From the NCBI GenBank assembly GCA_943704425.1, contig CALSCP010000216.1, positions 62,001-126,000 on the forward strand: 64,000 nt of DNA, given 5' to 3'. The notes under the pieces were generated by a model. That model did no database searches and had not been told where the DNA came from. It saw only the letters and a list, made by a program, of their open reading frames with translations. The position numbers and the translations under genes are program-made. This stretch comes from Ministeria vibrans ATCC 50519 (taxonomy: Eukaryota; Protista; Filasterea). This document shows positions 27,783-42,841 of the stretch, one piece after another. Positions within the stretch are counted from its first letter, which is position 1; the number at the start of each line of letters is the position of its first letter.

Positions 27783-30700
27783 TCAGTGCCCATACTTGGA
27801 CCGGCGACTCTCAAACTGTTCGTTGCCCTCCTGCACTACAATTGCCGGGTCGCGCTGCCTCCAATAGTCCCGTTCCGCCGCCTCCTCCCGATCAAGCTTG
27901 GCCTTCTCGCGTGTCAGAAGCGACATGAGCTTGCGCCACTCCATCTCGGCGGCCTGCAGGCGCTCACGCGCCGCATGCACATGCGGCAGCTCCATGTATT
28001 CCTTGTGCCGTCGCACCCACTTGGTATTGAATGCGTCCTGAATTGCTTCAATATGCACTCCAATCTGATGCGTGTACGAGCGCGAGCTGGTCAGCTCAGA
28101 GCGACGTTGAGCACACGCATGGTCCACCGCAATCTCATCCCACATGAGGTCCGTTGCCTCAGCGTCCACCTCGCTCGCCTCCACGTCAGCCACTTCGGAC
28201 GAATGAAAACCTGGCAACAACGACCGTCGCTGTGCCACAATCGCCGTGTAGTAGGCAAGCCACAGCTGCTTCTCCGCGTTGATAGCCAACGAGCGGAGCA
28301 CCTTAAGCTCTTTGAAGACGGAAAAGGCCAGCGAACTGTGTACCTCAACAAACTGCAGTGCTAGGTTGCGATGGAGCTCCTGTGGCATCTGCTCCAGCGC
28401 ATCGGCATGACTCACAAGCAGCGATGCAGACAGCGCGCCGCATCGACCCGCCACCGAAAAGGCAACCTGCACACAATGAAAAATCCCTTCGTCCTGCACC
28501 CGGCGAATCGGCATGCACGACATGAGCGCCGGCTCGCGCGCATCCGCAACGTGCTCGCGCGGACGCCACGCAAACGTGTACACCTTGTCGGGCGCTCGAT
28601 TAATCATGCGCGCCAAAATCTTCTCAGGCAACTCTTCCTCACCATCGCCCACGCGCTTAGGAATGCCCATCAGCTGCAGTCGCAGTCGCGATGGCACCGT
28701 AGTGCTCACTATCGTCCCATCGTCGCCAGTACGCTCGCTCGCCACTGTCGTCACCTTCTCTCCTTCTCCTCCTGACCCCGTTGCCTTCTCCGCGACAATC
28801 ATAAAGCGACAGCCGTGCCACTCAAACACCTGTGCATTCCGTTCAGCCTCCGCCATTTTCTGCTCCATTTCCCAGCGCGTCGAAAAAACAAGGACGTGCT
28901 CTCCACGCGAGAGCATCCCGTCCAGCTCCATCGACAGTGCCCCAGTCTCTTCGTCCTCATACACCGCATACACCAGACGCGCAATCTTCTTCACGTACAC
29001 CTGAACACCTTCCGCGCGCACATCACTCGCCGCGGATCGGTCCGGCTCATAGTGCAACGTGTAACCGTCGGAGAACACTTCGTGCGACGTAACCAGCGCC
29101 TGTCCCGGCAGCCCCCCCTCCGCCGTCACCACCTTCAGTGTGTCGTCGCTCTTGGATGCACCGCCAAACGCGTGTGAGGCTACCTCCGAGCGAATCGGAT
29201 GGCTCAGCTCGTCATCAAGACACGCATCGCCGCCCACATACAACGTCTGAATGCGCACCAACCAGCGCTTGCCGCGGCCCAGCATCAGTCCGCCCGGTAG
29301 CTCCATCACAATACTGTCACGGTTGCGCTCCAGCGCCGCCGCTCCATCGCGATCCACCGTCCGCCGCTGTTCGGTGCACGCCCACTCGCCCACCGCCTTC
29401 TGATACGCCGCCGGCACGGGTACATGCGCGTGTACCACCTTCCAGTGAACCGTCCGACTGCTCCCGTGCTCCGCCTCGTTGTAGTCCGACAACAGCTCCA
29501 CCTGGCGTTCCGCCGCACTCAGTCGTCGCACCGCCTCCGTCTCCTCAGTGTACTCAATGCGATAACCCAGCACACGCACATTCTGCCCAGAGACAACACG
29601 AGGGCGCCAGCTGACAGAAAATCCCTCCAGTGCCCCATACACAAAGTGACTTTCGTTCCGCGACACCAAAAATTGTTGTACAGGTCCCGGAGGCGACAGT
29701 GGAAAGCGCGTGCTCAGCGTCGATACATTTGATCGCTGCGGCGCCAGTCGACGCACCGCCTTAAACACCACCTCAACCCACACGTCGTAGCGCTTACACG
29801 GTTTCAGATCGCCAAAAGCCGCTCGATACTCGCGCGAGCCTTCCTCCACAGGCAAGCCTTTGGACTTGAGAGGCGCATTCGCGTCGTCTTCGTACGCCTC
29901 CAGTGCCGCCTCGTCCTCCTCGTCCTCCTCGTCCTCCTCGTCGTCGTCGTCATCGTCCGCAATGCCATCGCTGTTGGCACGTCCGCGTGTTGTCAGCATC
30001 GGATGTGTTGCCCATTCATCGTCGTCGCCGTCCTCCTCATCGTCGGCAGCCTCCAGTCGAAATAACACCGTCGTCTTGGTCGTGTCAAAGCCCTCAGGGG
30101 CAACCCAGCGCAAGGCCAACGAACGCTCGCGTCGCATAGTGGCACTCGGCATTTGCGGGCGGAACTTTCCAATGACATACAAAAAGTGTCGCTTCGGCGG
30201 CTCCGACGGATCTTCGGGCGTCACCGTGATGGCAAGACTCAAGAACATACCAGGATGGACACGCAGCGGCATCGTGACCTCTTCACCATCCACGTCGGCA
30301 GACGCACCCGCCTTACGCGCATCTGCTTGCAACTTGCGTCGCCCAAACGTACCACCCCGACGCATGGTCTTCATCGCCGCCTGCTTAGCACTACGCTCAA
30401 TGTCCAGCGCAACGTGCCACGCGGAGCATTTGGCGCGAGGATGCGTCTGTGGACGCAAGTCCACCATGGTCCACTTGCGCGTTTGCACACGAATCACACC
30501 GTCCATCGACTTGACTGTCGTCGATGCTTCGAGTCCTCGTGTTCGTGTGCAGTGCCCAACCACGCACGCGACATCGGCGTCGTCACTCAATGCGTACAGG
30601 TGAATAAAGTGATTCTTGGGCGGTCCCTTCTGCGCCTTCACCTGTACCTGCACCACCGTCTCATAGCCGGGCAGCACATCAACCTCCTCCTTGCCACGCA

Positions 30701-33700
30701 CCTCTCGTCGCGACACACCACTGTCCTCCTCCGCCATGCGCACTGCACTCGCCTTGCCCTCCTCCTGTCCGTCCGGAAGATCTCGTGGTTCAAAGGCATA
30801 CAGGGTTGTGCTCGTCGTGGAAGCCTCAGGCTTCACATGTATCACTACCTTGCCGGGCACATCCGCACGGTGGTGAATGCCGTCCGGGTCGCTCCGCAAG
30901 TGAATACCACCTGAGTTCTTGCCCTTGAGCGTGCTCACTTGAATAACATTGAGGGTCGTGTTGCATTCGTTTGATGCACACGTTGTCACCGACACCGGCG
31001 CCGACCATGGCCCCGCAAGAACCACCTGTTGGTCAGTCTCAACGACGAGCCGTGCAAACAATCGATGTTCCGTGTTCGCCTGCAAACCCTCAATCACAAG
31101 CTCGCGTAGACGCGCCACGTCTCGTTCCTTCACGCGCGCCACAACCGTCTTTGAGTCGTCTGCATTACCCGCTTTGCCCGTCGTCGCCACCATCTGATAG
31201 TACCGCTGTGAGACACCCGCACGCTCAGCCATCAGCAAAGGCTCGAGTCGTGCCTCATGACACGACACCGATGCACTCGAGTCGAGCACATTGGCGATGT
31301 CCAGCAAATGAGGCGCATCGCCACCGCCGACAATTACTTGACGCGCCTCGTCGCCCAACGATCGAGTAAGCAAGGTGCGCCACAGCTCACGATGATACTG
31401 CGGCTCCTTCGTCGTCATGGTGAAGCGAGGATCGCTCCAGGGTCCCGCCATCGTCATCTCAGTGCCCGTCGGATTGCCGTGTGTGTCCCGGAAGCGCATG
31501 CTGAGGACGGCACGAACGCGCAACGTGTACTTGGTGTTCTCAGGCACGTTAGCCAGGCACACAATGGTATCGTCGCGTACGGGTCGCTCGTCAGGTAGTC
31601 CACTTTCGTCGCGATTGTGCGCCACCGGCTCGATCCACTCGTCCATACCTCGGTTAATGCCAATGTTCACTTGACGACGCACAATGCACATTTGCGGCAT
31701 CACACTGCCCGCTCGCTGGCCCGTCTCGTCGGCCCAACTCAGCGAGCGCTCAGTCACACGTACCACCATGGAGCGGTCAAGCGGTGTGATCTCCACGGGA
31801 GGGTCCACGTGCAACACATCCGTCTCGACAAGCGCCTCGACCGTCTCATGGGAGGTCTCCACACCACGAGGAGGTGTGGTGAACCAGTCAATAATGGTAT
31901 ACGAGCCGGCAGCCTTCACCGACTCAGCCCCGCCGCTCTCATCGCGTGTTACCAACCGCCGTGCCACCACAGTGTAAGCGGTGCCTGGCTGGACGGGCAC
32001 CCAGGTACCCTGCGAGTCGGCAATGATGGCACACGAGGATGGATCGGGACGCCACTTTACCATGTCTTTCTTCACCATGTTACCGGGAACCACGCGGAAT
32101 TCGTAGCGTATCACGTCACTCTCGGGCATCGCCAACTGCACATGTGCTGCATTGGTTAACACGATCGGTGAACGCGCACACCGCACGGGAGGAAGTGCCT
32201 CATGCCGATCAAACTCCGCCTGTAGTCGAAAGTTGCGCTCGTCGCTCTCAAGTCGCGACAAGATCTCGTGATCGTGGTCGACGGTATTCGCGTTGCGCGC
32301 CGAACCAAACACTTCAAGAGCCCGAGGCACCACTGGTACCGGTGGAATGGGCACTTCTTCCGGGACCTTTGCTAGCGGTGGCTGTGCCTCTGGCGCCGCT
32401 TTCGGGTTGCTCGGGCCTGGCGGCTCAGGTTTTGCTGCCTTTGGTTCAGCAACAAACACACTGACCGTACCTTCGTCCAGATAGGAAGGATTCAGTATCA
32501 ATGGGGCCGGATCTTCTCCGTTGAAGGAGTCGGACGAATCGGAAAAGACTGACATTTGCAAAGAGTTCAACCGTTCGTGACCCTGCTTATGGCGGTGGCG
32601 ACGACGACTACGACGGCGCGCGCAGAGCACACAACAACAGCCAAGAAGGAGAACCAAAAGCAACCCAGCAAGACCAGCCGCAAGGTAAATCCAGGGAAAC
32701 GAAGCGGCGGGATCAGAAACGGTCGAAACAATTGTCTGACACGCGAACAAAGACGGATCGCCCACTGCACTTCGAATGTGCTGGCACTTGGTACCGGTGG
32801 GACACGCCACGCAACAACCGTCTTGCTCCGACGTGGGCGCCTGAATCGACCCAGTCGTCGTGTACGACGAGTTGGTTGGCACACAGCCTTCGTTGTTGCA
32901 AAGTGCCGCGCAGGGTTCGCACGTATAATTGACCAAGTTGGGTCGCGTGTCGACTGGACACGCAAGAAGACAAAGCGTGTTCGCCTCGGGGGTACATTTG
33001 GACACCTCAAAGCGAAGCGAATCTTGACAGTTGGTGCACCGTGTGCATTGACGATCAGCCAGGGTTGTACAGGGTTGTGACTGGTAGTGTCCGTGGGGAC
33101 AGCCGACGGAACACGGGACGCACGTGGCTGTTGCATTGAGGGTGAGGCCGGTACATGGCGCATCGAGAAAGGTTGCGCCAATCGTACACTGTGCAGCTGT
33201 CATGCAATCGTTGCAAATTGTGTTGTGCGTCGAGTTGCACCCCCGTTCAATATACTCGTGCACTTCACACTCGTGGCATACGGTGCAGTTGAGACCGTCG
33301 CCCCACTGGCCAGGCGGACAAGGTGCACAGTCAAAGCCTAAATCAGGCGCGGCCCGATCCGTGCAGTTGGTGAAACAGGGCGACGTGCGACACGCATCAA
33401 TGTCACGACAGGTGCGATCGTGCGTTGCGTTGCATGCAAGATGGTCCTCAAAGCCAGCGGGGCAGCTGTGAAGCGGTGTGCAGGCAGCGCACAGTGTACG
33501 AGCGTCGCCAAAATATCCACTGTGGCATTCACATGTGTAGGCGCCTACCAAATTGGTGCAGTTGGCATTGGAAACACACACACTCGGTGTTTCAACACAC
33601 TCGTTGATGTCCATGTCGCACACAGAGCCAGTCCAGCCAGCGGCACACGCACATGTAAAGCCGTTGAACAGATCGCTGCATGTGCCGTCGTTGGCACACG

Positions 33701-36700
33701 GGTTGGACGCACACTCTTGCAGCTCACATTCGCACGAGGGTCCGGTGAGTCCAGCAGGACAGTCACACACAAATCGCGCGATTGCATCAATGCAAATGCC
33801 GCCCTTGAGACACGCGCCATCAATGGGTAGACTGGAATTAAACGTGGTGGGTCGCATCCAGGGCAGCGGGCACATCAAATCGCTCTCGGTGTCATTCAGT
33901 GCGCCGCCGAAAAGCAGTAGAGCAGCCAGTGGATTCACCCCGTAGCTCACAGCCTGCGCAATCGTCGCGGGTGCGCACTCGTCAATGTTAATTTCGCAAC
34001 AGGGCCCGGTGAAACCCGCGGCGCACGCACACGAGCCGTTGAAGGCTACACAGTGGGCCGAAGCAGCAATGCCGCCCGATGGAGCAATATCAAGACACGT
34101 GCCATTATTAAGGCATGGCGATAGTGGCTCTTGATTGGCAAAACTCGTTTTGATGTAGTTGTAGCAAGAGGAATTGCGCACGAGAAGTGTTTCACAGAAA
34201 GTGCCGGTGTACTCGGGCGGACACGAGCAAAAGTCACAGGAGGTGTCGTTGAGCAAGCCCCCGTTGAAGCAAGGGTCGCCAATCTCACAGAGATCGCCGT
34301 GAAAGCCTCCAACGCACTCACAGCGATAGCGCGGATCCGTCGGCGACTCAATAGGAATGTCCAGACACGACCCGCAATTTTGGCATGGATTGATGGCGCA
34401 CGCAGTGGTATTCACCTCACAAAGTGCACCGTACACGCCAAGGGGACAGTCGCAGCGCCACGGATTGCCAAACCGTGACAAATCGCTCCCAGCCATGTCG
34501 GTGCAGGAGCCTTGCACACAGGTGATGTTGTGCGCGTCGCAGCCGTCGATGTCCTCGTCGCAACGCACACCTCGATACCCCTCGCGACACGTGCACGCAA
34601 AAGCGAGCGCGACACCATCGGTACAATTGATCGCGCCCGTGATACTACACGGGACAGTACGGCACACGTCAACGTCGTCTTGGCACGTGGGTCCTTCAAA
34701 ACCCTCAGGACAGGCACAGACAAATGAGGCAAGTGCAGGACGCAGAATGCAGGTGGCGCCCACGCCGCAGGGCGACGACCCACAGAAATCCACCTCGGTC
34801 TCACAACGGGAGCCCGTGTAGCCCGCTGTACACGTACACTTAGGCACAAGACCCAAGTCGACACAGCTGCCGCGATGCTGACATGGGTTCGGATCACAAT
34901 GGTCAATCTCGACGGAGCAGAGCGTGCCGGTGTAACCTTGTGGGCACAGGCAGACAAACGAAGCGCCAATAAGAGCACAGGTGCTGCCCGATGCACATGG
35001 TGCACCTGCACACGGATCGGGCACGGTGCCAATAGGTGTGCACGACAGTGGGTTCGTGAGCAGCCCTTGAGAGTTACAAGTGCGCACAAAGAAGTTGGTG
35101 CCATTGAGAAAGCCGTTGGTCGTGAATCCTCCATCGCACACGTACACGGCCGTATCGCCAAACACAAGCTCGGTGCCAGCCGGTGTCACTGTGGCATTGG
35201 CAATGTTTGGCGCAACGCCACAGCGAATGCGCTCGAGACAGAGGGTGTTGACAAAACCTTGCGCACACACACACTCAAACGAGGAGAGTCCATCGAGACA
35301 GGTGCCACCATGAGCACACGGGTTCGAGAGACACTCGTCAAAATCCACATCGCAGAGGGTACCAGTCCAGCCAGCGGCACAAGTGCACGCAAAGGTACAT
35401 GCGTCTACAGTGTTGGCGGTGCACACGCCGCCATTGGCACATGGATTTGACGAGCACACGTCAACTGACGCGTCACAAGTGGCACCAGTGAATCCACAAG
35501 AACACGCGCACGAGTACCCTCCCAAGTGGTCTGTGCAGTTACCGCCGTTGGCACAGGGTAGAAGCAGTTGGCTCTGCAGTGGAATTACTCCGTGTTGGTC
35601 CCAGTAGTCTAGCGTCGCTTGGAGTGTGAGGGGCCTGCAGAAGGTTTGGACAATGTCACAGTGAGTACCAATGAACCCTGTTGGACAGGTGCACGTTTGA
35701 CCGGCGGCAACGAGAAGGGTACAATTGGCACACTGCGTGTCAAAGAGAGCATTGCACTCGCTCACAAGTGACTCCCCCTGCCCACACGTGCTGCACGGCT
35801 CACACGTGCCTGTCTGCGCATTCGCATAGAACCCAGCATGACAAAAGCGCACGCAGCGATCTTCAAACAACGTCAAGTTTTGGCTGGCGTTGCACTCGAC
35901 ACAAACACGTGCGCTCGTACACGTGACACAACCAGGTTCGCATGCAGTGCACGTGCGATCTTCCGTCGCAGTGCACGCCTGACTCTCAAATGTACCGGAG
36001 GGACATCCGAGCTGACAGGGTGTGCACAATGCATCGCTGTTGGGTAGCGGTGCAAACGAGCCGGAGGGACACGCGGCACAGACACGATCGGTGCTCGAGA
36101 GGCACGGGGCGCTTTGATGGAAGCCAGCCGAGCAGAGGGTGCAGATTTGACAGATAGTATCAAAAGAGCCGTGACAACCGGCAAGTGCAAAAGTGCTGGG
36201 GGAGCAGATGGAGCACGGATCGCACGAGGTGCTCTGAATGCCGTCGGCACATGTGCCATTAAGAAACTCGCCCAAAGCACAAGACGTCTCACACGGCTCG
36301 CATGCCTCACCACCGTTGACGGCCTTGAACGATCCTTGGGGACAAGCAACACACTGGTCGTCGGTCGACGCTCCACATATGCCGAGGAGCTCTTGGCCCG
36401 GTGGACACGCCGACGTGCAGTTGGCACAGTTGCGATCGGCAAAGCCCGAACTCAGACAGCCACCCGAGGCAAATTGGTTGGCGCCGCAGAGAGTGCAGGG
36501 CCGACATTCGCGCGTCGGCGACACAACCTTGTAGTAATCAGATGGGCATGTGCTCACGCACGTCTGCGAGGCGGACAAAAGAAAGGTGGGGTCAACGCAC
36601 GCAACGCAGTTGTTGCTGTCTGGACCAAAGCAGGCAGCGCACGCAGGGTTGCAGGGAAGACAAGCACTGCCGCTGGCATCTTGGTAGTTTCCGGTAGTAC

Positions 36701-39700
36701 ACGCACTCACACAAGAAGATCCCTCGAGGAGAAAAGAGCCCACGCAAGTGAGACACGTCGAGGGGGAGTTGCGCGCGCAAGTAGCGCACGTGGAGTCACA
36801 CGGCGTGCAGACGGGTGTCGACGTGGCCGTACAGTCGCCTACAAGGGTTTCGGCAACCGAAGGGCACGACGCGGTACATGGCGAGCAGGGGAGGGCGGAG
36901 CGTGTGAGTGAGTAATGCTGTGGAGGACACACTGGGCACGACGGCGATGTGATCGACGTGCAACTGCCAGTCAGCTCGGTGCCCGCATCGCACGCCTGAG
37001 TGCACGCCGCGCAAGCAACATTGCCCACCAAAGGCTTGAATGTGCCCGTAGTACACGGCAAGCAAATCTGGTTTTGAGTCGCGCTGCATGCGGCACTGAG
37101 GGTAAACCCCGCCCCACACATTGTCGAAGTACACGGCGTGCATAAAGTCGCAGCTGAAGCGATCCCTTTGAAGGTATTTGGCGGACAAGGTGAACACTGC
37201 AGCGTGAGTAGGCCGTTGCCGCACAGACCTGACTGAAACAAGCCGGCGGGGCAATCTGCGGAGGGACATGCAGCGCAGACACGGTCGTTCGTTGGTGTGG
37301 GTGAGACCATCTCGAATTCGGTTGCATTGCAGACGCGCAGTGGTGTGCAGCCCGTGTCGTAAAAGAGGGTGCACGCTCGCGATACAAAGCTTGTGCTGGG
37401 ACAGGTCGAGCAAGATTGACATACAGTGTCGACGCTGAGAGAACAGTTTTGCGTGGCAAAGGAGACGCCCGAGATGCATGTGGTGCACGCCTGGCACTGG
37501 CGTTGAGCAGTGGCGGTGCAAGGTGACACCTCAAAGGTGATGCCAAAGGAGCAGGAAATACAGGCAGGACAAGTGCCCGTCGTGGCATCAAGATAAAACC
37601 CCGGTACGATGGCGCTGAGTCCCTGAGTGCCACAACAAGTGGCGCAACCCGAGGGACACGCAGTGAAAATGGGCAATGGAGAAAATTCGCCCGACATGAC
37701 GGGAGCATAGCTACCGGGGACATTGTCGTTGAGTTGGAGCACGTAGTTGTTAGGTCCATCCCAATCTGTGTTGAGATAGGTGACAGTAGTTGCAGCAGAG
37801 GTCAGTCCACCCGCGTCATAACGCACTACGACCACTGCCACCTGGATGGTGGTCGCCTCCGAGACGACTAGCGACGCACGAGCAGAAAAGGTGGCGCCAC
37901 TCTGAGTGGCAAGAACAACTTCATTGCTCGAGACCATGGTGCCTTGGCAGGCAGTCGCAGTCAGTGTGCCAGTCACAGGTTTCAAGTGAAAGTACACATC
38001 GGCGGTGACTGACGACGCTGGGGTCGGCGTATCGGCAAGAGAGGCACTCAGTTGAAAGGAGGGTCCAACCTGAATGGGAGCTTCAAACTCCGCAATGTAT
38101 GTGGCGGCCGAAATAGCACGGTTGAGGCGAGACACGTCATTAATTTGAAGCAATTGGTTGTGATCAACGTCGAGCACGTCAAGATCCAGTACAACTCCCG
38201 GCGCAGCGACGCAGGGCGAGGTGAGAGAATTTTGACACTGATGTACGAGGAACAATTGGAGCAGCTGGGCGTCGGTGCCTGTCACTTGTGCGTCGCAGTT
38301 AACATCACCACGAACAGGTGTGACCATGCAGGCAGTGGCACGAGTAACACGCGAGACTTCGTGGTTGGCAGTTAATGCGCTGTCGAGGTCAGCGCTTCCA
38401 GGAGGGAGTTGGATGCTGGAAAAAATTCGCGCGAGATCCTCCTCGACATCTTCTTCTTCGATCCCATCGTCGCGTCGACGCCGACGCCCGAGCGAGGCCG
38501 AGACAACCATGGCGCCTGTGCCCGCCTGAAAGGTACGAGGGTATGACACCGACGCGATAAGCGTGTTGCCAGCGCGGTTGTTCAGTTCGACAAGGCTGCC
38601 ACTGAAACTGGCCGTCCCCGACGTCCCAGCGCGTGCACGGAACGTGAGGGTGACCACGGAGACAACGTTGGTCAGGAGACCCGTCGACTTAACGAGACCC
38701 AACACACGAACACAGCCGACACAGACGGCATCGGGTGTGACAAGAATTTCGCTCCAGTCACTACGCGAGTCACGTTGGGAGCCAAGCAATTCGAGACGCG
38801 TCTTGTCGTAGTACACATCAGCAAGAAAGAAGCCCAGGGGTATGGAGCCCACATTGACACGCACCTCGATGTCAAATTGAACGCCTGGTGCCATTTGAGC
38901 GAATGGAAAGGACACGAGAGGGCCCAGATCAACGTCGCCCATGACGGGAGCAAGATTACAGCTTACCGCGGCGGTATCGCTTGTTGAAGAGCTGCACGAC
39001 AGCTTCGCCATAATCTCTACCGGTGACGAGCCGACGCTGTTCAAACGAAGTGTTACCAAACCTGTGGCAGAATCGACGCTGGCAATCGAGCTGTTACTCG
39101 ACGAGTATGCAAGAGGGATGTCGGAGCGTGCGCTCGCAGCGGTCACACGTGTGCCATCGGCGAGAACCAAATCAACGTAGGTCTGCGCGGTAGCAACTCC
39201 CGACTGTCCCACAAGGGTGAAGCCCATCTCGGTCGGCGATTGAAAGTAGGTGACCATCAACGTGACGGAAACAGGCGAGTTGAGGGCACCAAAGGACTCG
39301 GTGGCGTCCACGCCGTTCCCGTTCAGTCCAAAATTGGCACTGACCGTGACAGTCCCAGGCGATTCGGGAGTCACCACCACCACACCGCTGGTGGCGGAGT
39401 AATAGCGCGACTCAGGCGCCGAAATAATACCGTTAGTGGCCGTGAAGATAGTATGTTGTGTGACAGGTTGAGAAGCGCCGTCGCTGGCCACAAGCTTGAG
39501 GCTAAGTGACCGTTGTTGAAAGGGAGCAAGGGCGCAACCGAGACGCCCCACGTCGTCGTCGCCGAGGTCGACCATGTCGCTTGGCCACAGATTGACGGCG
39601 CCTGAGTTTACGTCGGGTGGATACTGGTGCACACCGACGGTGAACGAGTCGGTGGCAACGACGCTGATGGTGACCGGGTCAGACGCGACCGCATGTTGAC

Positions 39701-42700
39701 CTGGTAATTTGACAGTGGCCACAAGCGTGAGGGTTCCACTCGAGGCACCCGTTGGCGTGGCACTCGGTTGTGCGGTCACAACCAATCGAGAGGGATCGCT
39801 CGAGGTAATGGATGTGCTATCGCTCGTAGAAAATGTCGCCTGGAGACCCGTCTCGAAGATGACCAAGACAAAAAGCGAGCTGCTGGTAGACAATCCAAGG
39901 AGTGCGAGAGGATCGGAGGCACTAATGGCCAGACGCGGCTCTGTGACGGAGAGGGTGACAGAGGCAATTTTGGGAAACTTGACGACAACGGTCGCCGAGG
40001 TGCGAAGGAGCGTGGCGAGACCGGCTTGAAACGCGACTGAATTTTCGGAGCAGGTCGAAAAAATTCCTTCAAGACCTTCGCGACACCAGTCAAACATTGC
40101 AAGCGCACGGTATGTTGGCATGCCCGCAAGGTCGACCGCATCGACCACACGCACGGCACCTTCAGTCAGGTTAGCGTGGACGAGGAGCGAGCCGGGTGTG
40201 ACACGGGTCACTTCTTGAACGGTACCATCACTGAGGAGGAGCCACACAATGATTTCGGCCTCGGCACCGGGCACCTCGAGGCTCTGTACGACGCCAGTCA
40301 CGTTGATGGTTGCGCCCGGCATGCCTGCTGCATCGAAAGTCGTAAGAGGTGTGGCGCCCGACGACGACGTGAGTAGTCCCGTGGCGGCAGCGACATGTAG
40401 TGACACAATGGTCACTGGTGCACTCGTGGACACCGTCAGCAAAGTGCTGGCCAACGGAGTTTGGTCGGACGGACGGAGTGCAGAGATAGGTGTTGTCCCC
40501 GTCGTGAGACCCTCAATGATTACAGAAGACGTGGACGAGCTGGGAATGCTTTCGGTGCGCACGCTTGCAACGGCGTTGTTGTCGGCGGTAAGCGAGACAA
40601 GGCCCGTCACGTCGACCGTGCCCGCTTGAACAGAACCGTCCGCGTTTTGCAGGGTGGCGAGCACATGCGCGCCAGTGGACTGGAAACGATTGGCGTTGCT
40701 GGCGGTACTCTGACAGTCAGCGGGATAGTGTTGAATGGACTGCAACGTGGAGCGGTCAAGAACAACGCGCAACGAAGCAAAGGACCACGGTGAGAATACC
40801 ATGGACGTTTGTTTCGAGTCGAGCGTCGCCACGACTTCCGTGGCGGCGACTGGAGAAGGCACTACCTCGCCACCAGTAAGCTGCACTTGACAGCCACCGG
40901 TGCGAGATGTGACCGAAAACATGTTGTTATGAAGCGCAGAGCAGGCAGTGGGTGTGACGAGCGTGACGGGTGTGGAAGCGGACGAGTAGACGGCGTAGGT
41001 GTGAAGATCGCGAGTCAGAGATTCCCCCGTCAACATGGCCGTGTTGACAAGGTTGTTTGAGGGTGTCTCGGAGGTGGAGGTGGGGGCGCGCATCAGAAGA
41101 ATACCGCGCAAATCGTTGGTGCGAAACGAGACACTCCCTTGACTGCTTCGTCCCGTCGCATCGTCAAAGGTACAAGGGGTTGAAGCGTCGCCAAACTCGG
41201 CGTTTCCATCACTGAGCTGAATACCACCGCACCCGAATAGAGCCGTGGAAGCAGTGACGACCGACGACCTGACTGTGAAGCGCACGGTCGCAAGGGGAAC
41301 AGCAGTGCCTGATGTGGTGACCGTGTCGGTTGTGAGGCCATTGAGACCAAGGGTGCCCAGCGACGAGACTTTGATTAGGCCACTGAAGCCAATGGCAATC
41401 GTGGATCCTTGAGTGTCGTCGTGTGCTGTGACCGAGGAGCTGTCGTACGTGAGCGTCACCTGCCAAGCTTTAAGAGTACGCGGAAGCACCGACGCAAAGA
41501 CGCTGGTGGTGAAGGTGTCGCCGGGTGCGAGAGGCGCCAGTGGAAGCGACCAGTAGACAGCAATGTCGGCGATGGGAGGCGAGTAGGTGACTGTCGCGTG
41601 CAAGCTGGGCATGGCGGTGAGCCCAGTGACGGCAAGGGGCGCGGCCGCAGACGCGCTGGGTGATGTAAATGCGAGCAGCAAGGGGACTGCTGCGGATGGC
41701 GAGAACCAGGCGGTCGGCAGCCCGAGACTGAAGACGCACGGTGCGACGCCGACATGGCACGTCTCCGAACGAGTGTCGGCGGGCACGGTAGCGCGCGCCA
41801 CGACCAATGCTAGCGTAGAGCCGCTGATCACAAGCGAGCTGCCCGTGGCATCGTACGCGGCTGCTACGACTCGTACGTTGGGCGCATCCACAAAAATGGA
41901 GTCGGCGAGCGCAATTGCCTCAACCCGAGCAATCTGCCGCCGTGGCTTGTCGCTGAATTGCGTCGACGAGAGAGACTGTTGTAGTAGTGGGCGTCTGGCG
42001 AGGGAAATAGCCTTTGGAGCGACATCGTCGGAGCTAGTCGCGATCTGAAAAACAATACGTGAATAAAAATAATGAATTAATGAAGATAGTCACTCAATAC
42101 TGTGCACTCAGACGTCAGAGAACTGAAGACCGTAAGGTAAAGAGAGTTCAACAGTGAGCAGAAGAAAGTAGAATGCTGAGATGACTCGGAGAGAAGGAAA
42201 TGGGGACGATTGTTATTGCGAGCAGGTTTAGTGTCGAGCGATATCGAAGCGCACGGAACGTGTGCACATTTGAAGGCCGGTGAATGGTTTTAGTGGCATA
42301 CTTGCAATGTGGCAGTGTAAAATTTGGATTCTTATCGAGGGGGAGGGGGGGCGCGTCCGACTTTTTGACGGGGTGATTGTTAATCCCAACCCTTTTGACG
42401 CTATTTTGCGGTGATTATGCGAATTTTCTATTTTACCGGGAAAGTCGTTGAGTCGGCGGATTCGACTGCAACAACGCTTGGTACAAGCTGTGGAGTGGCT
42501 TGCAAAAAGGATTGTGAGATGAGTTGGGTAGGGAGAGGGAGGCGAAGGTCGGGAGACAAGCACGGCAGGTCGACAGCTGTTGCGTTTGCGCATGTGCAGT
42601 TGTGGCTCGACGTGGCGACGCTTCCTGAGCAGTCTAGAGTAAGCAGCTGGAAGCACGAACTGTCTGAATCAAGCTGGCAGGTGCGGTAGAGTGCAATCTG

Positions 42701-42841
42701 TGTTGACGGCAAACCGGTCGACACTGTCCCCGCAGTGACATTTGACGAGCAAGGGTTGCACTGGGCAGACTGTACGGTCAGCAGAAGCCAAAGGCCCAAG
42801 AGGGGAGCAAAGATACGCAGGAAGGTTGTTATCGAGGCCAT
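27783..42841 (-). CDS. Giant (~4,900 aa) type I membrane protein: signal peptide, TMEM132-like cohesin + Ig-like domains, second cohesin, furin sites, dockerin, TNFR/furin-like Cys repeats, EGF repeats, one sushi, TM, cytoplasmic FN3-like repeats and C-terminal coiled coil
   Basis: Signal-like MASITTFLRIFAPLLGLWLLLTVQSAQC at 42841; one uninterrupted exon 42044-27783; EGF consensus such as DECLSNPCAHGGTCLDGLSSFECVCAQGF; TM WIYLAAGLAGLLLVLLLGCCCVLC followed by RRRSRRR at ~32600-32695. Small exons between 42044 and 42436 are uncertain. Confidence 0.9.

What the first reader, a model, noticed from the sequence alone, without database searches (positions are those of the whole stretch)
38110..38900. 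Cohesin - furin sites - dockerin cassette: candidate cleavable Ca2+-dependent latch in a eukaryotic receptor
Seen, in N-to-C order: a cohesin-like domain (PGVQFDIEVRVNV..FLADVYYDKTRLELLG..VVTLTFRARAGTSGTASFSGS; ~38900-38505); RRRRR (38486-38472); an acidic spacer; a second RxxR site, RVTR (38351-38340); then a two-loop dockerin-like module (GDVNCDAQVTGTDAQLLQLFL..DVDHNQLLQINDVSRLNRAI; ~38310-38110). Known: cohesin-dockerin pairs are the very high-affinity, Ca2+-dependent, mechanically strong connectors of bacterial cellulosomes, and proprotein convertases cut after RxxR. Inference: cleavage would excise the spacer and leave the distal adhesion head held on the membrane-anchored stalk only by cohesin-dockerin binding. 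This would be a releasable or force/Ca2+-sensitive heterodimer, analogous to Notch S1/NRR or GAIN domains. With two cohesins per chain it could also cross-link receptors in trans or dock other dockerin-tagged secreted proteins, giving a cellulosome-like surface scaffold. I know of no described eukaryotic system of this design.
Basis: partly seen in the sequence, partly recalled or inferred. Interest (0 to 1): 0.9.

Follow-up and report, generated by a model that had tools for sequence, protein, structure and literature searches.

The report
Cleavable cohesin-dockerin joint in receptor
A giant surface receptor of a single-celled eukaryote has a bacterial-type cohesin and dockerin side by side, separated by conserved furin-type cutting sites, so it is probably cut in two and held together only by that calcium-dependent clasp, a design I could not find described.

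Summary

**What is there**
- The predicted fold of the cohesin-like module matches solved cohesins.
- A profile of the family matches only solved cohesins and dockerins.
- Both dockerin calcium loops are intact.

**Conservation**
- In about 140 cassettes from about 100 homologous eukaryotic proteins, R-x-[KR]-R motifs are 63 times denser in the cohesin-dockerin linker than elsewhere in the same proteins.
- The motifs sit at two fixed places: just after the last cohesin strand, and 10-25 residues before the dockerin.
- Homologues include choanoflagellate giant cadherins, Salpingoeca rosetta PTSG_03507 and the green alga Mesostigma.

**Support for cleavage and binding**
- The protein has a signal peptide on an upstream exon; transcript contigs support the splice.
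- The genome encodes two furin/kexin-type convertases.
- The genome has no other dockerin.
- A complex prediction supports cohesin-2 binding the dockerin (0.71 against 0.01 for the best control).
- The strongest covarying column pair between the two modules is one of the predicted contacts, and it is complementary in size.

**Limits**
- Neither cleavage nor binding has been shown.
- A scaffold for other dockerin-tagged proteins is not supported.
- Eukaryotic cohesins are known (TMEM132, coherins). I found no paper describing the dockerin with cleavage sites.
- The scan also noted this stretch in an overlapping window.

The parts
42437..42841 (-). Exon 1: ATG plus 135 codons. It holds a signal peptide (basic start, Leu-rich core, ...VQSAQ then Cys) and a short Cys-containing N-terminal region.
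   Evidence: Read from the sequence. Transcript contigs of runs X1 and X3 join 42437 to 42044.
42045..42436 (-). Intron of 392 nt, GT..AG on the minus strand, phase 0.
   Evidence: the joint skips 392 bases in two transcript assemblies and is absent from DNA run X5. The frame was checked.
27783..42044 (-). Exon 2: the rest of the roughly 4888-aa type I membrane protein. The listed ORF of 4702 aa starts at the GTG at 41891; add 186 for full-length numbering.
41253..41567 (-). N-terminal cohesin (cohesin-1), of the TMEM132 type.
   Evidence: Family profile A1 hits it at E 1.1e-8. Pfam Cohesin scores E 0.005, below the cut-off.
40425..41060 (-). TMEM132-like Ig domains (aa 278-350 and 396-489).
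   Evidence: Pfam Ig_TMEM132_4th E 0.0013 and 5th E 0.027, both below cut-off. Homologues carry them above cut-off.
38487..38939 (-). Cohesin-2 (aa 985-1135).
   Evidence: AlphaFold2 pLDDT is 88-97. The Foldseek top hits, about 40 of them, are nearly all cohesins, the best being 6kgf_C at E 3.4e-7 and TM 0.75. Profile A1 matches solved cohesins at E 1.5e-5. The homologous module in P0005 is Pfam Cohesin at 1.1e-24.
38472..38486 (-). Site 1: RRRRR, a candidate proprotein-convertase site just after the last cohesin strand.
   Evidence: It is the only R-x-[KR]-R in the ectodomain. The homologous position holds RRRR in most cassettes, peaking at +140 to +155 from GDVDLG. The model has pLDDT about 50 at this site and under 50 in much of the linker.
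38352..38471 (-). Spacer of 40 aa that would be cut out (30% Asp/Glu here).
   Evidence: The family spacer has a median of 20 aa (range 4-77) and is not generally acidic. Much of it is low-confidence in the model, with two short low-confidence helices.
38340..38351 (-). Site 2: RVTR, a minimal R-x-x-R, 10 residues before the dockerin Gly (its first Arg is 14 residues before).
   Evidence: Homologues have R-x-[KR]-R 10-25 aa before the dockerin in 65 of 139 cassettes.
38100..38309 (-). Dockerin (aa 1195-1264). Calcium loop 1 is at nt 38271-38306 and loop 2 at nt 38136-38171; each is followed by a helix.
   Evidence: EF-hand positions 1, 3, 5, 12 read D,N,D,D and D,D,N,D. Pfam Dockerin_1 scores 18.4 bits, below the 22.9 cut-off. 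Profile A1 matches solved dockerins at E 7.5e-7. Homologues P0005 (32.8 bits) and P0002 (29.1 bits) pass the cut-off.
37668..38099 (-). Conserved beta-rich domain directly after the dockerin; fold not identified.
   Evidence: Beta strands at pLDDT 55-73. Homologue alignments continue through it.
32694..37667 (-). Cys-rich stalk of TNFR-type and EGF repeats.
   Evidence: Pfam EGF 2.6e-41 and TNFR_c6 7.8e-32.
32625..32693 (-). Transmembrane helix (aa 3067-3089), followed by a basic stop-transfer stretch.
27786..32624 (-). Cytoplasmic tail of about 1600 aa.
   Evidence: There is a weak fn3 hit. Not studied further.

Best explanation
The stretch is one copy of a conserved eukaryotic cassette: cohesin, multibasic site, spacer, multibasic site, dockerin.

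Proposed mechanism:
1. The dockerin, folded around two calcium ions, binds the cohesin just upstream, using its two helices in the canonical way.
2. In the secretory pathway a furin/kexin-type convertase cuts after RRRRR, and probably also after RVTR, removing the spacer.
3. The receptor becomes two chains. One is the TMEM132-like adhesion head ending in cohesin-2. The other is the membrane-anchored stalk starting with the dockerin.
4. The two chains are held together only by cohesin-dockerin binding.

Shown: the homology of both modules, the conserved sites, the signal peptide, the convertase genes and the transcript.

Inferred: binding (from prediction and covariation), cleavage (from motif conservation), and any release by force or calcium loss.
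For: Module identity
- Cohesin fold: AlphaFold2 pLDDT 88-97; Foldseek top hits nearly all cohesins.
- Family profile A1 against the sequences of all solved structures: nearly all matches, and all the significant ones, are dockerins (best 7.5e-7) and cohesins (best 1.5e-5).
- Homologues pass Pfam cut-offs for Cohesin and Dockerin_1 at the aligned places.
- Calcium-loop positions 1 and 12 are 96-100% conserved in 135 cassettes.

Cleavage sites
- R-x-[KR]-R occurs at 20.3 per 1000 aa in the linker against 0.32 elsewhere in the same 153 proteins, a 63-fold difference.
- 105 of 139 cassettes have at least one site and 66 have two separated sites, at fixed positions.
- RRRRR is the only such motif in this ectodomain.

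Access to the protease
- The signal-peptide exon is joined in frame, supported by two transcript assemblies.
- Two loci encode Peptidase_S8 plus P-domain proteins, one about 50% identical to animal PC1, furin and PACE4.

Binding
- Complex prediction of cohesin-2, two calcium ions and the dockerin: score 0.71, best of 3 controls 0.01. On the tool's calibration 51 of 78 solved complexes and 2 of 108 mismatched pairs reached the mark. The three runs agree in at least 98% of contacts and the partner pLDDT is at least 69.
- The contacts fall on dockerin positions 9-11, 13-15, 17, 18 and 21 of the first loop and helix, and 13, 14, 17, 18 and 20-23 of the second.
- Covariation: of about 15,000 column pairs between the two modules, the top pair (cohesin column 90, dockerin column 287; corrected mutual information 0.484, next best 0.29) is a predicted contact.
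- That pair is complementary in size. Gly pairs with Phe in 68 cassettes. Val, Leu or Thr pair with Ala, Ser or Val. Non-Gly pairs with Phe in only 2 cassettes.
- The 25 listed contacts score above background, p 0.005.

No outside partner
- No other dockerin or cohesin gene was found in the genome.
Against: - There is no protein-level evidence for cleavage or binding.
- This protein's own modules fall below Pfam cut-offs: Dockerin_1 scores 18.4 bits against 22.9, and cohesin-2 gets no hit.
- The dockerin folded alone gave a mediocre model (pLDDT 68.5) with no significant structural match.
- The complex score may come from the model's memory of solved cohesin-dockerin complexes (caveat).
- Predicted interface columns are not more conserved than the rest (1.73 against 1.94 bits).
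- The phylogeny-controlled test of the covarying pair is underpowered: about 4.4 pairs go the same way and essentially none the opposite way (0.0 on average), median p 0.125.
- About a quarter of cassettes lack a strict R-x-[KR]-R motif, and site 2 here is only R-x-x-R.
- Covariation cannot tell binding within one molecule from binding between two copies of the same protein.
- The pairing of cohesin-1 with the dockerin was not tested.
Confidence: 0.5

Rival explanations
1. Uncut internal clasp. The dockerin binds the adjacent cohesin in one continuous chain as a rigid or shock-absorbing joint. The Arg runs have another role, such as binding sulfated glycans or acting as a charged hinge, and are not cleaved.
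For: Binding support is the same as for the best explanation. Tandem cohesin-dockerin proteins also exist in bacteria, which have no furin (nearest ESM Atlas clusters). About a quarter of cassettes lack a strict motif.
Against: The motif fits the convertase consensus, not mere Arg-richness: flanking positions are not Arg-rich. It sits at two fixed places in a linker much of which is modelled with low confidence, on a secretory protein, with a 63-fold enrichment. Convertases are encoded in the genome.
Confidence: 0.2
2. Docking between molecules. Cleavage frees the dockerin end of the stalk to bind cohesin-1 or cohesin-2 on neighbouring copies. This would give homophilic cross-linking or adhesion rather than a clasp within one molecule.
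For: There are two cohesins and one dockerin per chain. Covariation would look the same if a cassette bound its own type on another copy. The head resembles adhesion proteins (PMC6030884).
Against: In homologues nearly every dockerin directly follows its own cohesin, one to one. Linkers as short as 5-25 aa favour binding within the chain. The single-chain model has pTM 0.68 despite about 100 low-confidence residues (pLDDT under 50).
Confidence: 0.15
3. Simple shedding. Convertase cleavage releases the head as a soluble fragment, and the two modules no longer bind each other.
For: Conserved sites. The interface is not especially conserved.
Against: Calcium-binding residues are nearly invariant. 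There is size-complementary covariation at a predicted contact. The complex prediction passes its controls.
Confidence: 0.1
4. Scaffold for other dockerin-bearing secreted proteins, like a cellulosome.
For: Two cohesins per chain.
Against: No other dockerin or cohesin was found in the 29.7-Mb assembly by Pfam, single-sequence or family-profile search. The assembly is fragmented, so this is not absolute.
Confidence: 0.03

Closest known systems
Bacterial cellulosomal type I cohesin-dockerin pairs (for example 1OHZ, 2VN5, 6KGF, 4FL4)
   Same: Cohesin beta-sandwich fold. Dockerin built from two calcium-loop-plus-helix repeats. The predicted contacts use the dockerin helices against one sheet of the cohesin.
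   Different: Here both modules lie in one polypeptide, in a eukaryotic type I membrane receptor. Multibasic sites lie between them. The stretch between the two dockerin repeats is longer: the loops start 40-50 aa apart. Cysteines sit before and inside loop 1. No carbohydrate-active enzyme is attached.
TMEM132 proteins and the coherin, lefftyrin and hedgling cadherins of choanoflagellates and sponges (Sanchez-Pulido and Ponting 2018, PMC6030884; Nichols et al. 2012, cited there but not readable here)
   Same: Homologous head with an N-terminal cohesin and TMEM132-type Ig domains. The giant cadherin homologues P0004-P0016 and P0021 (Salpingoeca urceolata) carry the same cassette, up to four times.
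   Different: This protein has no cadherin repeat. The TMEM132 paper reports one cohesin, says dockerins are not detectable in vertebrates, and mentions neither eukaryotic dockerins nor cleavage.
Receptors cut by furin or by autoproteolysis into non-covalent two-chain forms (Notch S1, LAR-type phosphatases, FAT1; GAIN and SEA domains). Named from general knowledge.
   Same: Predicted cut in the ectodomain, with the outer and membrane-bound parts staying together without a covalent link. This raises the possibility of release under force.
   Different: The holding device would be a cohesin-dockerin pair, not an LNR/HD, GAIN or SEA fold. None of those Pfam families is found here. Two cuts would remove a spacer.
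Non-cellulosomal tandem cohesin-dockerin proteins of bacteria and archaea (Peer et al. 2009, not readable here; ESM Atlas clusters from Chloroflexota, Bacillota and Planctomycetota)
   Same: Cohesin and dockerin in one short polypeptide with no cellulase context.
   Different: Prokaryotic; I did not examine their linkers. The eukaryotic cassette has the convertase-type sites and sits inside giant adhesion receptors.

Membership tests
Cohesin (PF00963) | Nine-stranded beta-sandwich cohesin fold | tested here: met
   AlphaFold2 pLDDT 88-97. Foldseek top hits are nearly all cohesins: 6kgf_C at E 3.4e-7, TM 0.75.
Cohesin (PF00963) | Significant sequence-profile match | tested here: inconclusive
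   The window's own cohesin-2 gets no Pfam hit even at E 10. By contrast, family profile A1 hits solved cohesins at 1.5e-5, the aligned module of P0005 is Pfam Cohesin at 1.1e-24, and 17 of 31 short homologues match.
Cohesin (PF00963) | Binds a dockerin | not testable with these tools
   Prediction only: score 0.71 against 0.01 for the best control. Covariation at a predicted contact.
Dockerin type I (PF00404) | Two tandem segments, each an EF-hand-like calcium loop (Asp/Asn at positions 1, 3, 5, 12) followed by a helix | tested here: met
   The loops read D,N,D,D and D,D,N,D at those positions. A helix follows each loop. Positions 1 and 12 are 96-100% conserved in the family.
Dockerin type I (PF00404) | Pfam gathering score (22.9 bits) | tested here: not met
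   The window's own sequence scores 18.4 bits, E 0.0026. Homologues P0005 (32.8) and P0002 (29.1) pass. Profile A1 hits solved dockerins over their full length at 7.5e-7.
Dockerin type I (PF00404) | Dockerin three-dimensional fold | tested here: inconclusive
   The isolated model has pLDDT 68.5. The best Foldseek hit is dockerin 4fl4_D at E 1.7. The best VIA-align Z is 4.2 (unrelated chains); S100 EF-hand pairs score about 4.
Substrate of furin/kexin-type proprotein convertases | R-x-[KR]-R in an exposed, flexible, lumenal or extracellular segment | tested here: met
   RRRRR lies at the start of the linker, where pLDDT is about 50 and falls below 50 over much of its length, between the signal peptide and the transmembrane helix.
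Substrate of furin/kexin-type proprotein convertases | A convertase is present in the same organism | tested here: met
   Two loci encode Peptidase_S8 plus P_proprotein (115 and 85 bits). One is about 50% identical to animal PC1 and furin.
Substrate of furin/kexin-type proprotein convertases | Cleavage actually occurs | not testable with these tools
   Indirect only: 63-fold enrichment of the motif at fixed positions in homologues.
TMEM132 / coherin-type head | N-terminal cohesin followed by TMEM132-type Ig domains | tested here: inconclusive
   Cohesin-1 is hit by profile A1 at 1.1e-8. Ig_TMEM132_4th scores 19.1 bits and 5th 15 bits, both below cut-off. Homologues pass.
Coherin cadherins | Cadherin repeats | tested here: not met
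   No Cadherin family appears among the Pfam hits over the whole 4702-aa ORF.
Notch NRR, GAIN or SEA heterodimerisation domains | The respective domain is present | tested here: not met
   No such Pfam family is found. The likeness is functional only.

The most novel reading that the evidence does not exclude
The cohesin, convertase site, dockerin cassette is an ancient, widespread eukaryotic device. It would turn giant adhesion receptors, including choanoflagellate and early-animal cadherins with up to four cassettes, into chains of separate polypeptides joined only by calcium-dependent cohesin-dockerin clasps. Such clasps could act as mechanical fuses or release points. This would be the first function assigned to eukaryotic dockerins, and a holding device unrelated to Notch, GAIN or SEA.
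Probability: 0.4. Interest if true: 0.85.

Novelty: new variant of a known kind. Interest (0 to 1): 0.72.

Why it matters
Eukaryotic cohesin domains have been noted since 2008-2012, and since 2017 in human TMEM132 disease genes, but no partner or function has been assigned.

This work finds a dockerin partner next door, in the same chain. The two are separated by conserved convertase sites, with covariation at a predicted contact. That gives a concrete mechanism that can be tested with a blot, EDTA release and calorimetry. The mechanism is receptors processed into non-covalent subunits held by one of the strongest known protein-protein clasps.

The cassette occurs in filasterean-like, choanoflagellate and green-algal proteins and in giant cadherins. 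It therefore bears on how cell-adhesion machinery was built before animals arose. It could also supply calcium-switchable, protease-activated connectors for protein engineering.

Tried and rejected
- **Pfam on the window's own modules.** The dockerin is below the cut-off and cohesin-2 gets no hit. Membership rests on the family profile and on homologues.
- **Single-sequence search of solved structures.** Only marginal dockerin hits, E 0.7-1.1.
- **Dockerin folded alone.** Low confidence; Foldseek and VIA-align gave nothing diagnostic.
- **Interface conservation.** No enrichment: 1.73 against 1.94 bits.
- **Phylogenetically independent pairs for the Gly/Phe covariation.** The direction is consistent, but the test is underpowered, median p 0.125.
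- **Other dockerin or cohesin genes in the genome.** None found. This rejects the scaffold idea as stated.
- **The search for related loci with the family alignment.** Bacterial relatives and their linkers were therefore not examined.
- **Peer et al. 2009 and Nichols et al. 2012.** Not held in the library, so what they say about eukaryotic dockerins is unchecked.
- **Organism.** Not identified. The convertase search returned only relatives at about 50% identity.
- **Joined exon 1 plus exon 2 protein.** Never submitted to any tool. The exons were handled separately by reference.
Full report
**The gene**

The finding lies in a 14.1-kb open reading frame on the minus strand (27783-41891, 4702 aa from a GTG). 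This is not the whole gene.

- Upstream there is an ATG exon (42841-42437) encoding a typical signal peptide. A 392-nt GT..AG intron follows, and an acceptor at 42044 continues in frame into the long exon.
- Two transcript assemblies (runs X1 and X3) skip exactly 42045-42436. A DNA assembly (X5) does not.
- The transcript contigs run unbroken from 38000 to 42044. The cassette is therefore in the mature mRNA.
- The product is a type I membrane protein of about 4888 aa.

Its layout, from the N-terminus:
1. signal peptide;
2. a TMEM132-like head with an N-terminal cohesin and Ig domains;
3. the cassette;
4. a beta-rich domain;
5. about 1650 aa of TNFR-type and EGF repeats;
6. a transmembrane helix at ORF aa 3067;
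7. a tail of about 1600 aa.

I did not submit the joined two-exon protein to any tool.

**The observation**

RRRRR is the only R-x-[KR]-R motif in the 3066-aa ectodomain.

**Are the modules real?**

On its own sequence the evidence is thin. Dockerin_1 scores 18.4 bits, below the 22.9 cut-off, and cohesin-2 gets no Pfam hit.

Homologues settle the question.
- Searches of two large protein collections found 153 eukaryotic relatives at about 25-35% identity.
- In P0005 the aligned module is Pfam Cohesin at 1.1e-24, followed by Dockerin_1 at 32.8 bits.
- A profile of 31 family members, searched against the sequences of all solved structures, hits almost only dockerins (best 7.5e-7, full length) and cohesins (best 1.5e-5); the few other matches are not significant.
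- An AlphaFold2 model built with that alignment gives the cohesin pLDDT 88-97 and the dockerin helices 80-92. Much of the linker falls below 50.
- Foldseek returns cohesins for nearly all of the top hits, about 40.
- Both calcium loops have Asp or Asn at EF-hand positions 1, 3, 5 and 12. Positions 1 and 12 are 96-100% conserved across 135 cassettes.
- The dockerin folded alone gave only a mediocre model and no diagnostic structural match. The fold test for the dockerin is therefore inconclusive.

**The basic sites**

A motif scan that did not use the basic residues found 139 cassettes in 97 proteins.
- R-x-[KR]-R density is 20.3 per 1000 aa in the linker and 0.32 elsewhere in the same proteins, a 63-fold difference.
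- 105 of 139 cassettes have at least one site, and 66 have two separated sites.
- Site 1, mostly RRRR, lies 140-155 aa after the GDVDLG start, directly after the last cohesin strand.
- Site 2 lies 10-25 aa before the dockerin glycine.
- The flanks are not Arg-rich, so this is a discrete motif.

Named carriers include Salpingoeca rosetta PTSG_03507, a Salpingoeca urceolata cadherin, an acanthoecid choanoflagellate and the green alga Mesostigma viride.

The genome encodes two subtilase-plus-P-domain convertases. One is about 50% identical to animal PC1, furin and PACE4.

**Do the modules bind each other?**

*Complex prediction.* I submitted cohesin-2 (aa 975-1135), two calcium ions and the dockerin (aa 1185-1275). 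The score was 0.71 against 0.01 for the best of 3 controls. In the tool's calibration 51 of 78 solved complexes and 2 of 108 mismatched pairs reached the mark. The three runs agree in at least 98% of contacts, and the partner pLDDT is at least 69. The tool warns that a pass for a family with solved complexes may reflect memory. The contacts lie on both dockerin helices at the positions used in bacterial complexes.

*Covariation, as an independent check.* I aligned 135 cassettes and computed corrected mutual information for all column pairs between the two modules, about 15,000 in total.
- The top pair scored 0.484; the next best scored 0.29, and the background standard deviation is 0.05.
- That pair is cohesin column 90 with dockerin column 287, which is one of the predicted contacts.
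- The pairing is complementary in size. Gly pairs with Phe in 68 cassettes. Bulkier cohesin residues pair with Ala, Ser or Val. In this protein the pair is Leu with Ser.
- The 25 listed contacts score above background, p 0.005.
- A test on phylogenetically independent pairs goes the same way about 4.4 times and essentially never the opposite way (0.0 on average), but it lacks power (median p 0.125).

Interface columns are not more conserved than the rest. That result is neutral, because specificity-determining interfaces do vary.

**Other partners**

Pfam, single-sequence and family-profile searches of the 29.7-Mb assembly find no dockerin or cohesin outside this gene. A scaffold for other dockerin-tagged proteins is therefore not supported. 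Binding between copies of the same protein remains possible.

**Comparison with what is known**

Cohesins in TMEM132 and in coherin, lefftyrin and hedgling cadherins are published. That paper states that vertebrates have no detectable dockerin, and it does not mention eukaryotic dockerins or cleavage.

Full-text searches for dockerin with choanoflagellate, with furin or with TMEM132 returned nothing relevant. Peer et al. 2009 and Nichols et al. 2012 could not be read.

Tandem cohesin-dockerin proteins also exist in bacteria.

In function, the design resembles furin-processed or autoproteolytic two-chain receptors such as Notch, LAR-type phosphatases, FAT1, GAIN and SEA. It shares none of their domains.

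**Verdict**

- The cassette is real, conserved and probably functional.
- The cleavable-latch reading is the best explanation, at about even odds. It still needs protein-level evidence.
- I rate it a new variant of known kinds, and interesting.

Noticed in passing
window 42437-42841 and 42045-42436: The giant exon is not the whole gene. An upstream exon carries the ATG and signal peptide, and a 392-nt intron is removed in transcript assemblies. This corrects the first-stage note of a single 14.3-kb exon.
   Followed up: yes
window about 42844: The transcript contig of run X1 continues for 38 letters that do not match the genome beyond 42844. This suggests a further 5' untranslated exon or a leader sequence.
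   Followed up: no
window 37668-38099: A beta-rich domain directly follows the dockerin and is conserved in homologues (an LLRF-type motif, then strands). Its fold was not identified. It may stabilise the dockerin.
   Followed up: partly
window 38289-38339 and homologues: Most homologues have a Cys pattern (often PPCxxC) just before the dockerin and a Cys inside calcium loop 1, which bacterial dockerins lack. This protein has four Cys in the dockerin half. Disulfide bonds are likely but unassigned.
   Followed up: no
G000:C257:30365-30625 (L001) and G000:C2383:3443-3700 (L002): Two furin/kexin-type convertase genes (subtilase plus P-domain). L002 is a 777-aa single-exon ORF.
   Followed up: partly
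P0058 (Mesostigma viride) and P0017 (Cymbomonas tetramitiformis): The cassette also occurs in green-algal proteins. It is therefore either older than Holozoa, or was transferred, or these are contaminant sequences.
   Followed up: no
P0004, P0008, P0022, P0027, P0033 and similar: Giant cadherin homologues carry up to four cassettes per chain (mostly two or three). If all were cut, the protein would become several non-covalently linked pieces.
   Followed up: no
P0123, P0133, P0148: Some cassette-bearing homologues have cytoplasmic tails that appear to carry ankyrin or PDZ domains instead of this protein's long tail. The domains were read from the sequences, and one search shows one short homologue each with Pfam Ank or PDZ hits.
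   Followed up: no
runs X1-X4 (organism A) against X5-X6 (organism B): Transcript assemblies labelled as a different coded organism hold 90% of the stretch's sampled words. Where they were laid on it, they showed no differing letters.
   Followed up: no
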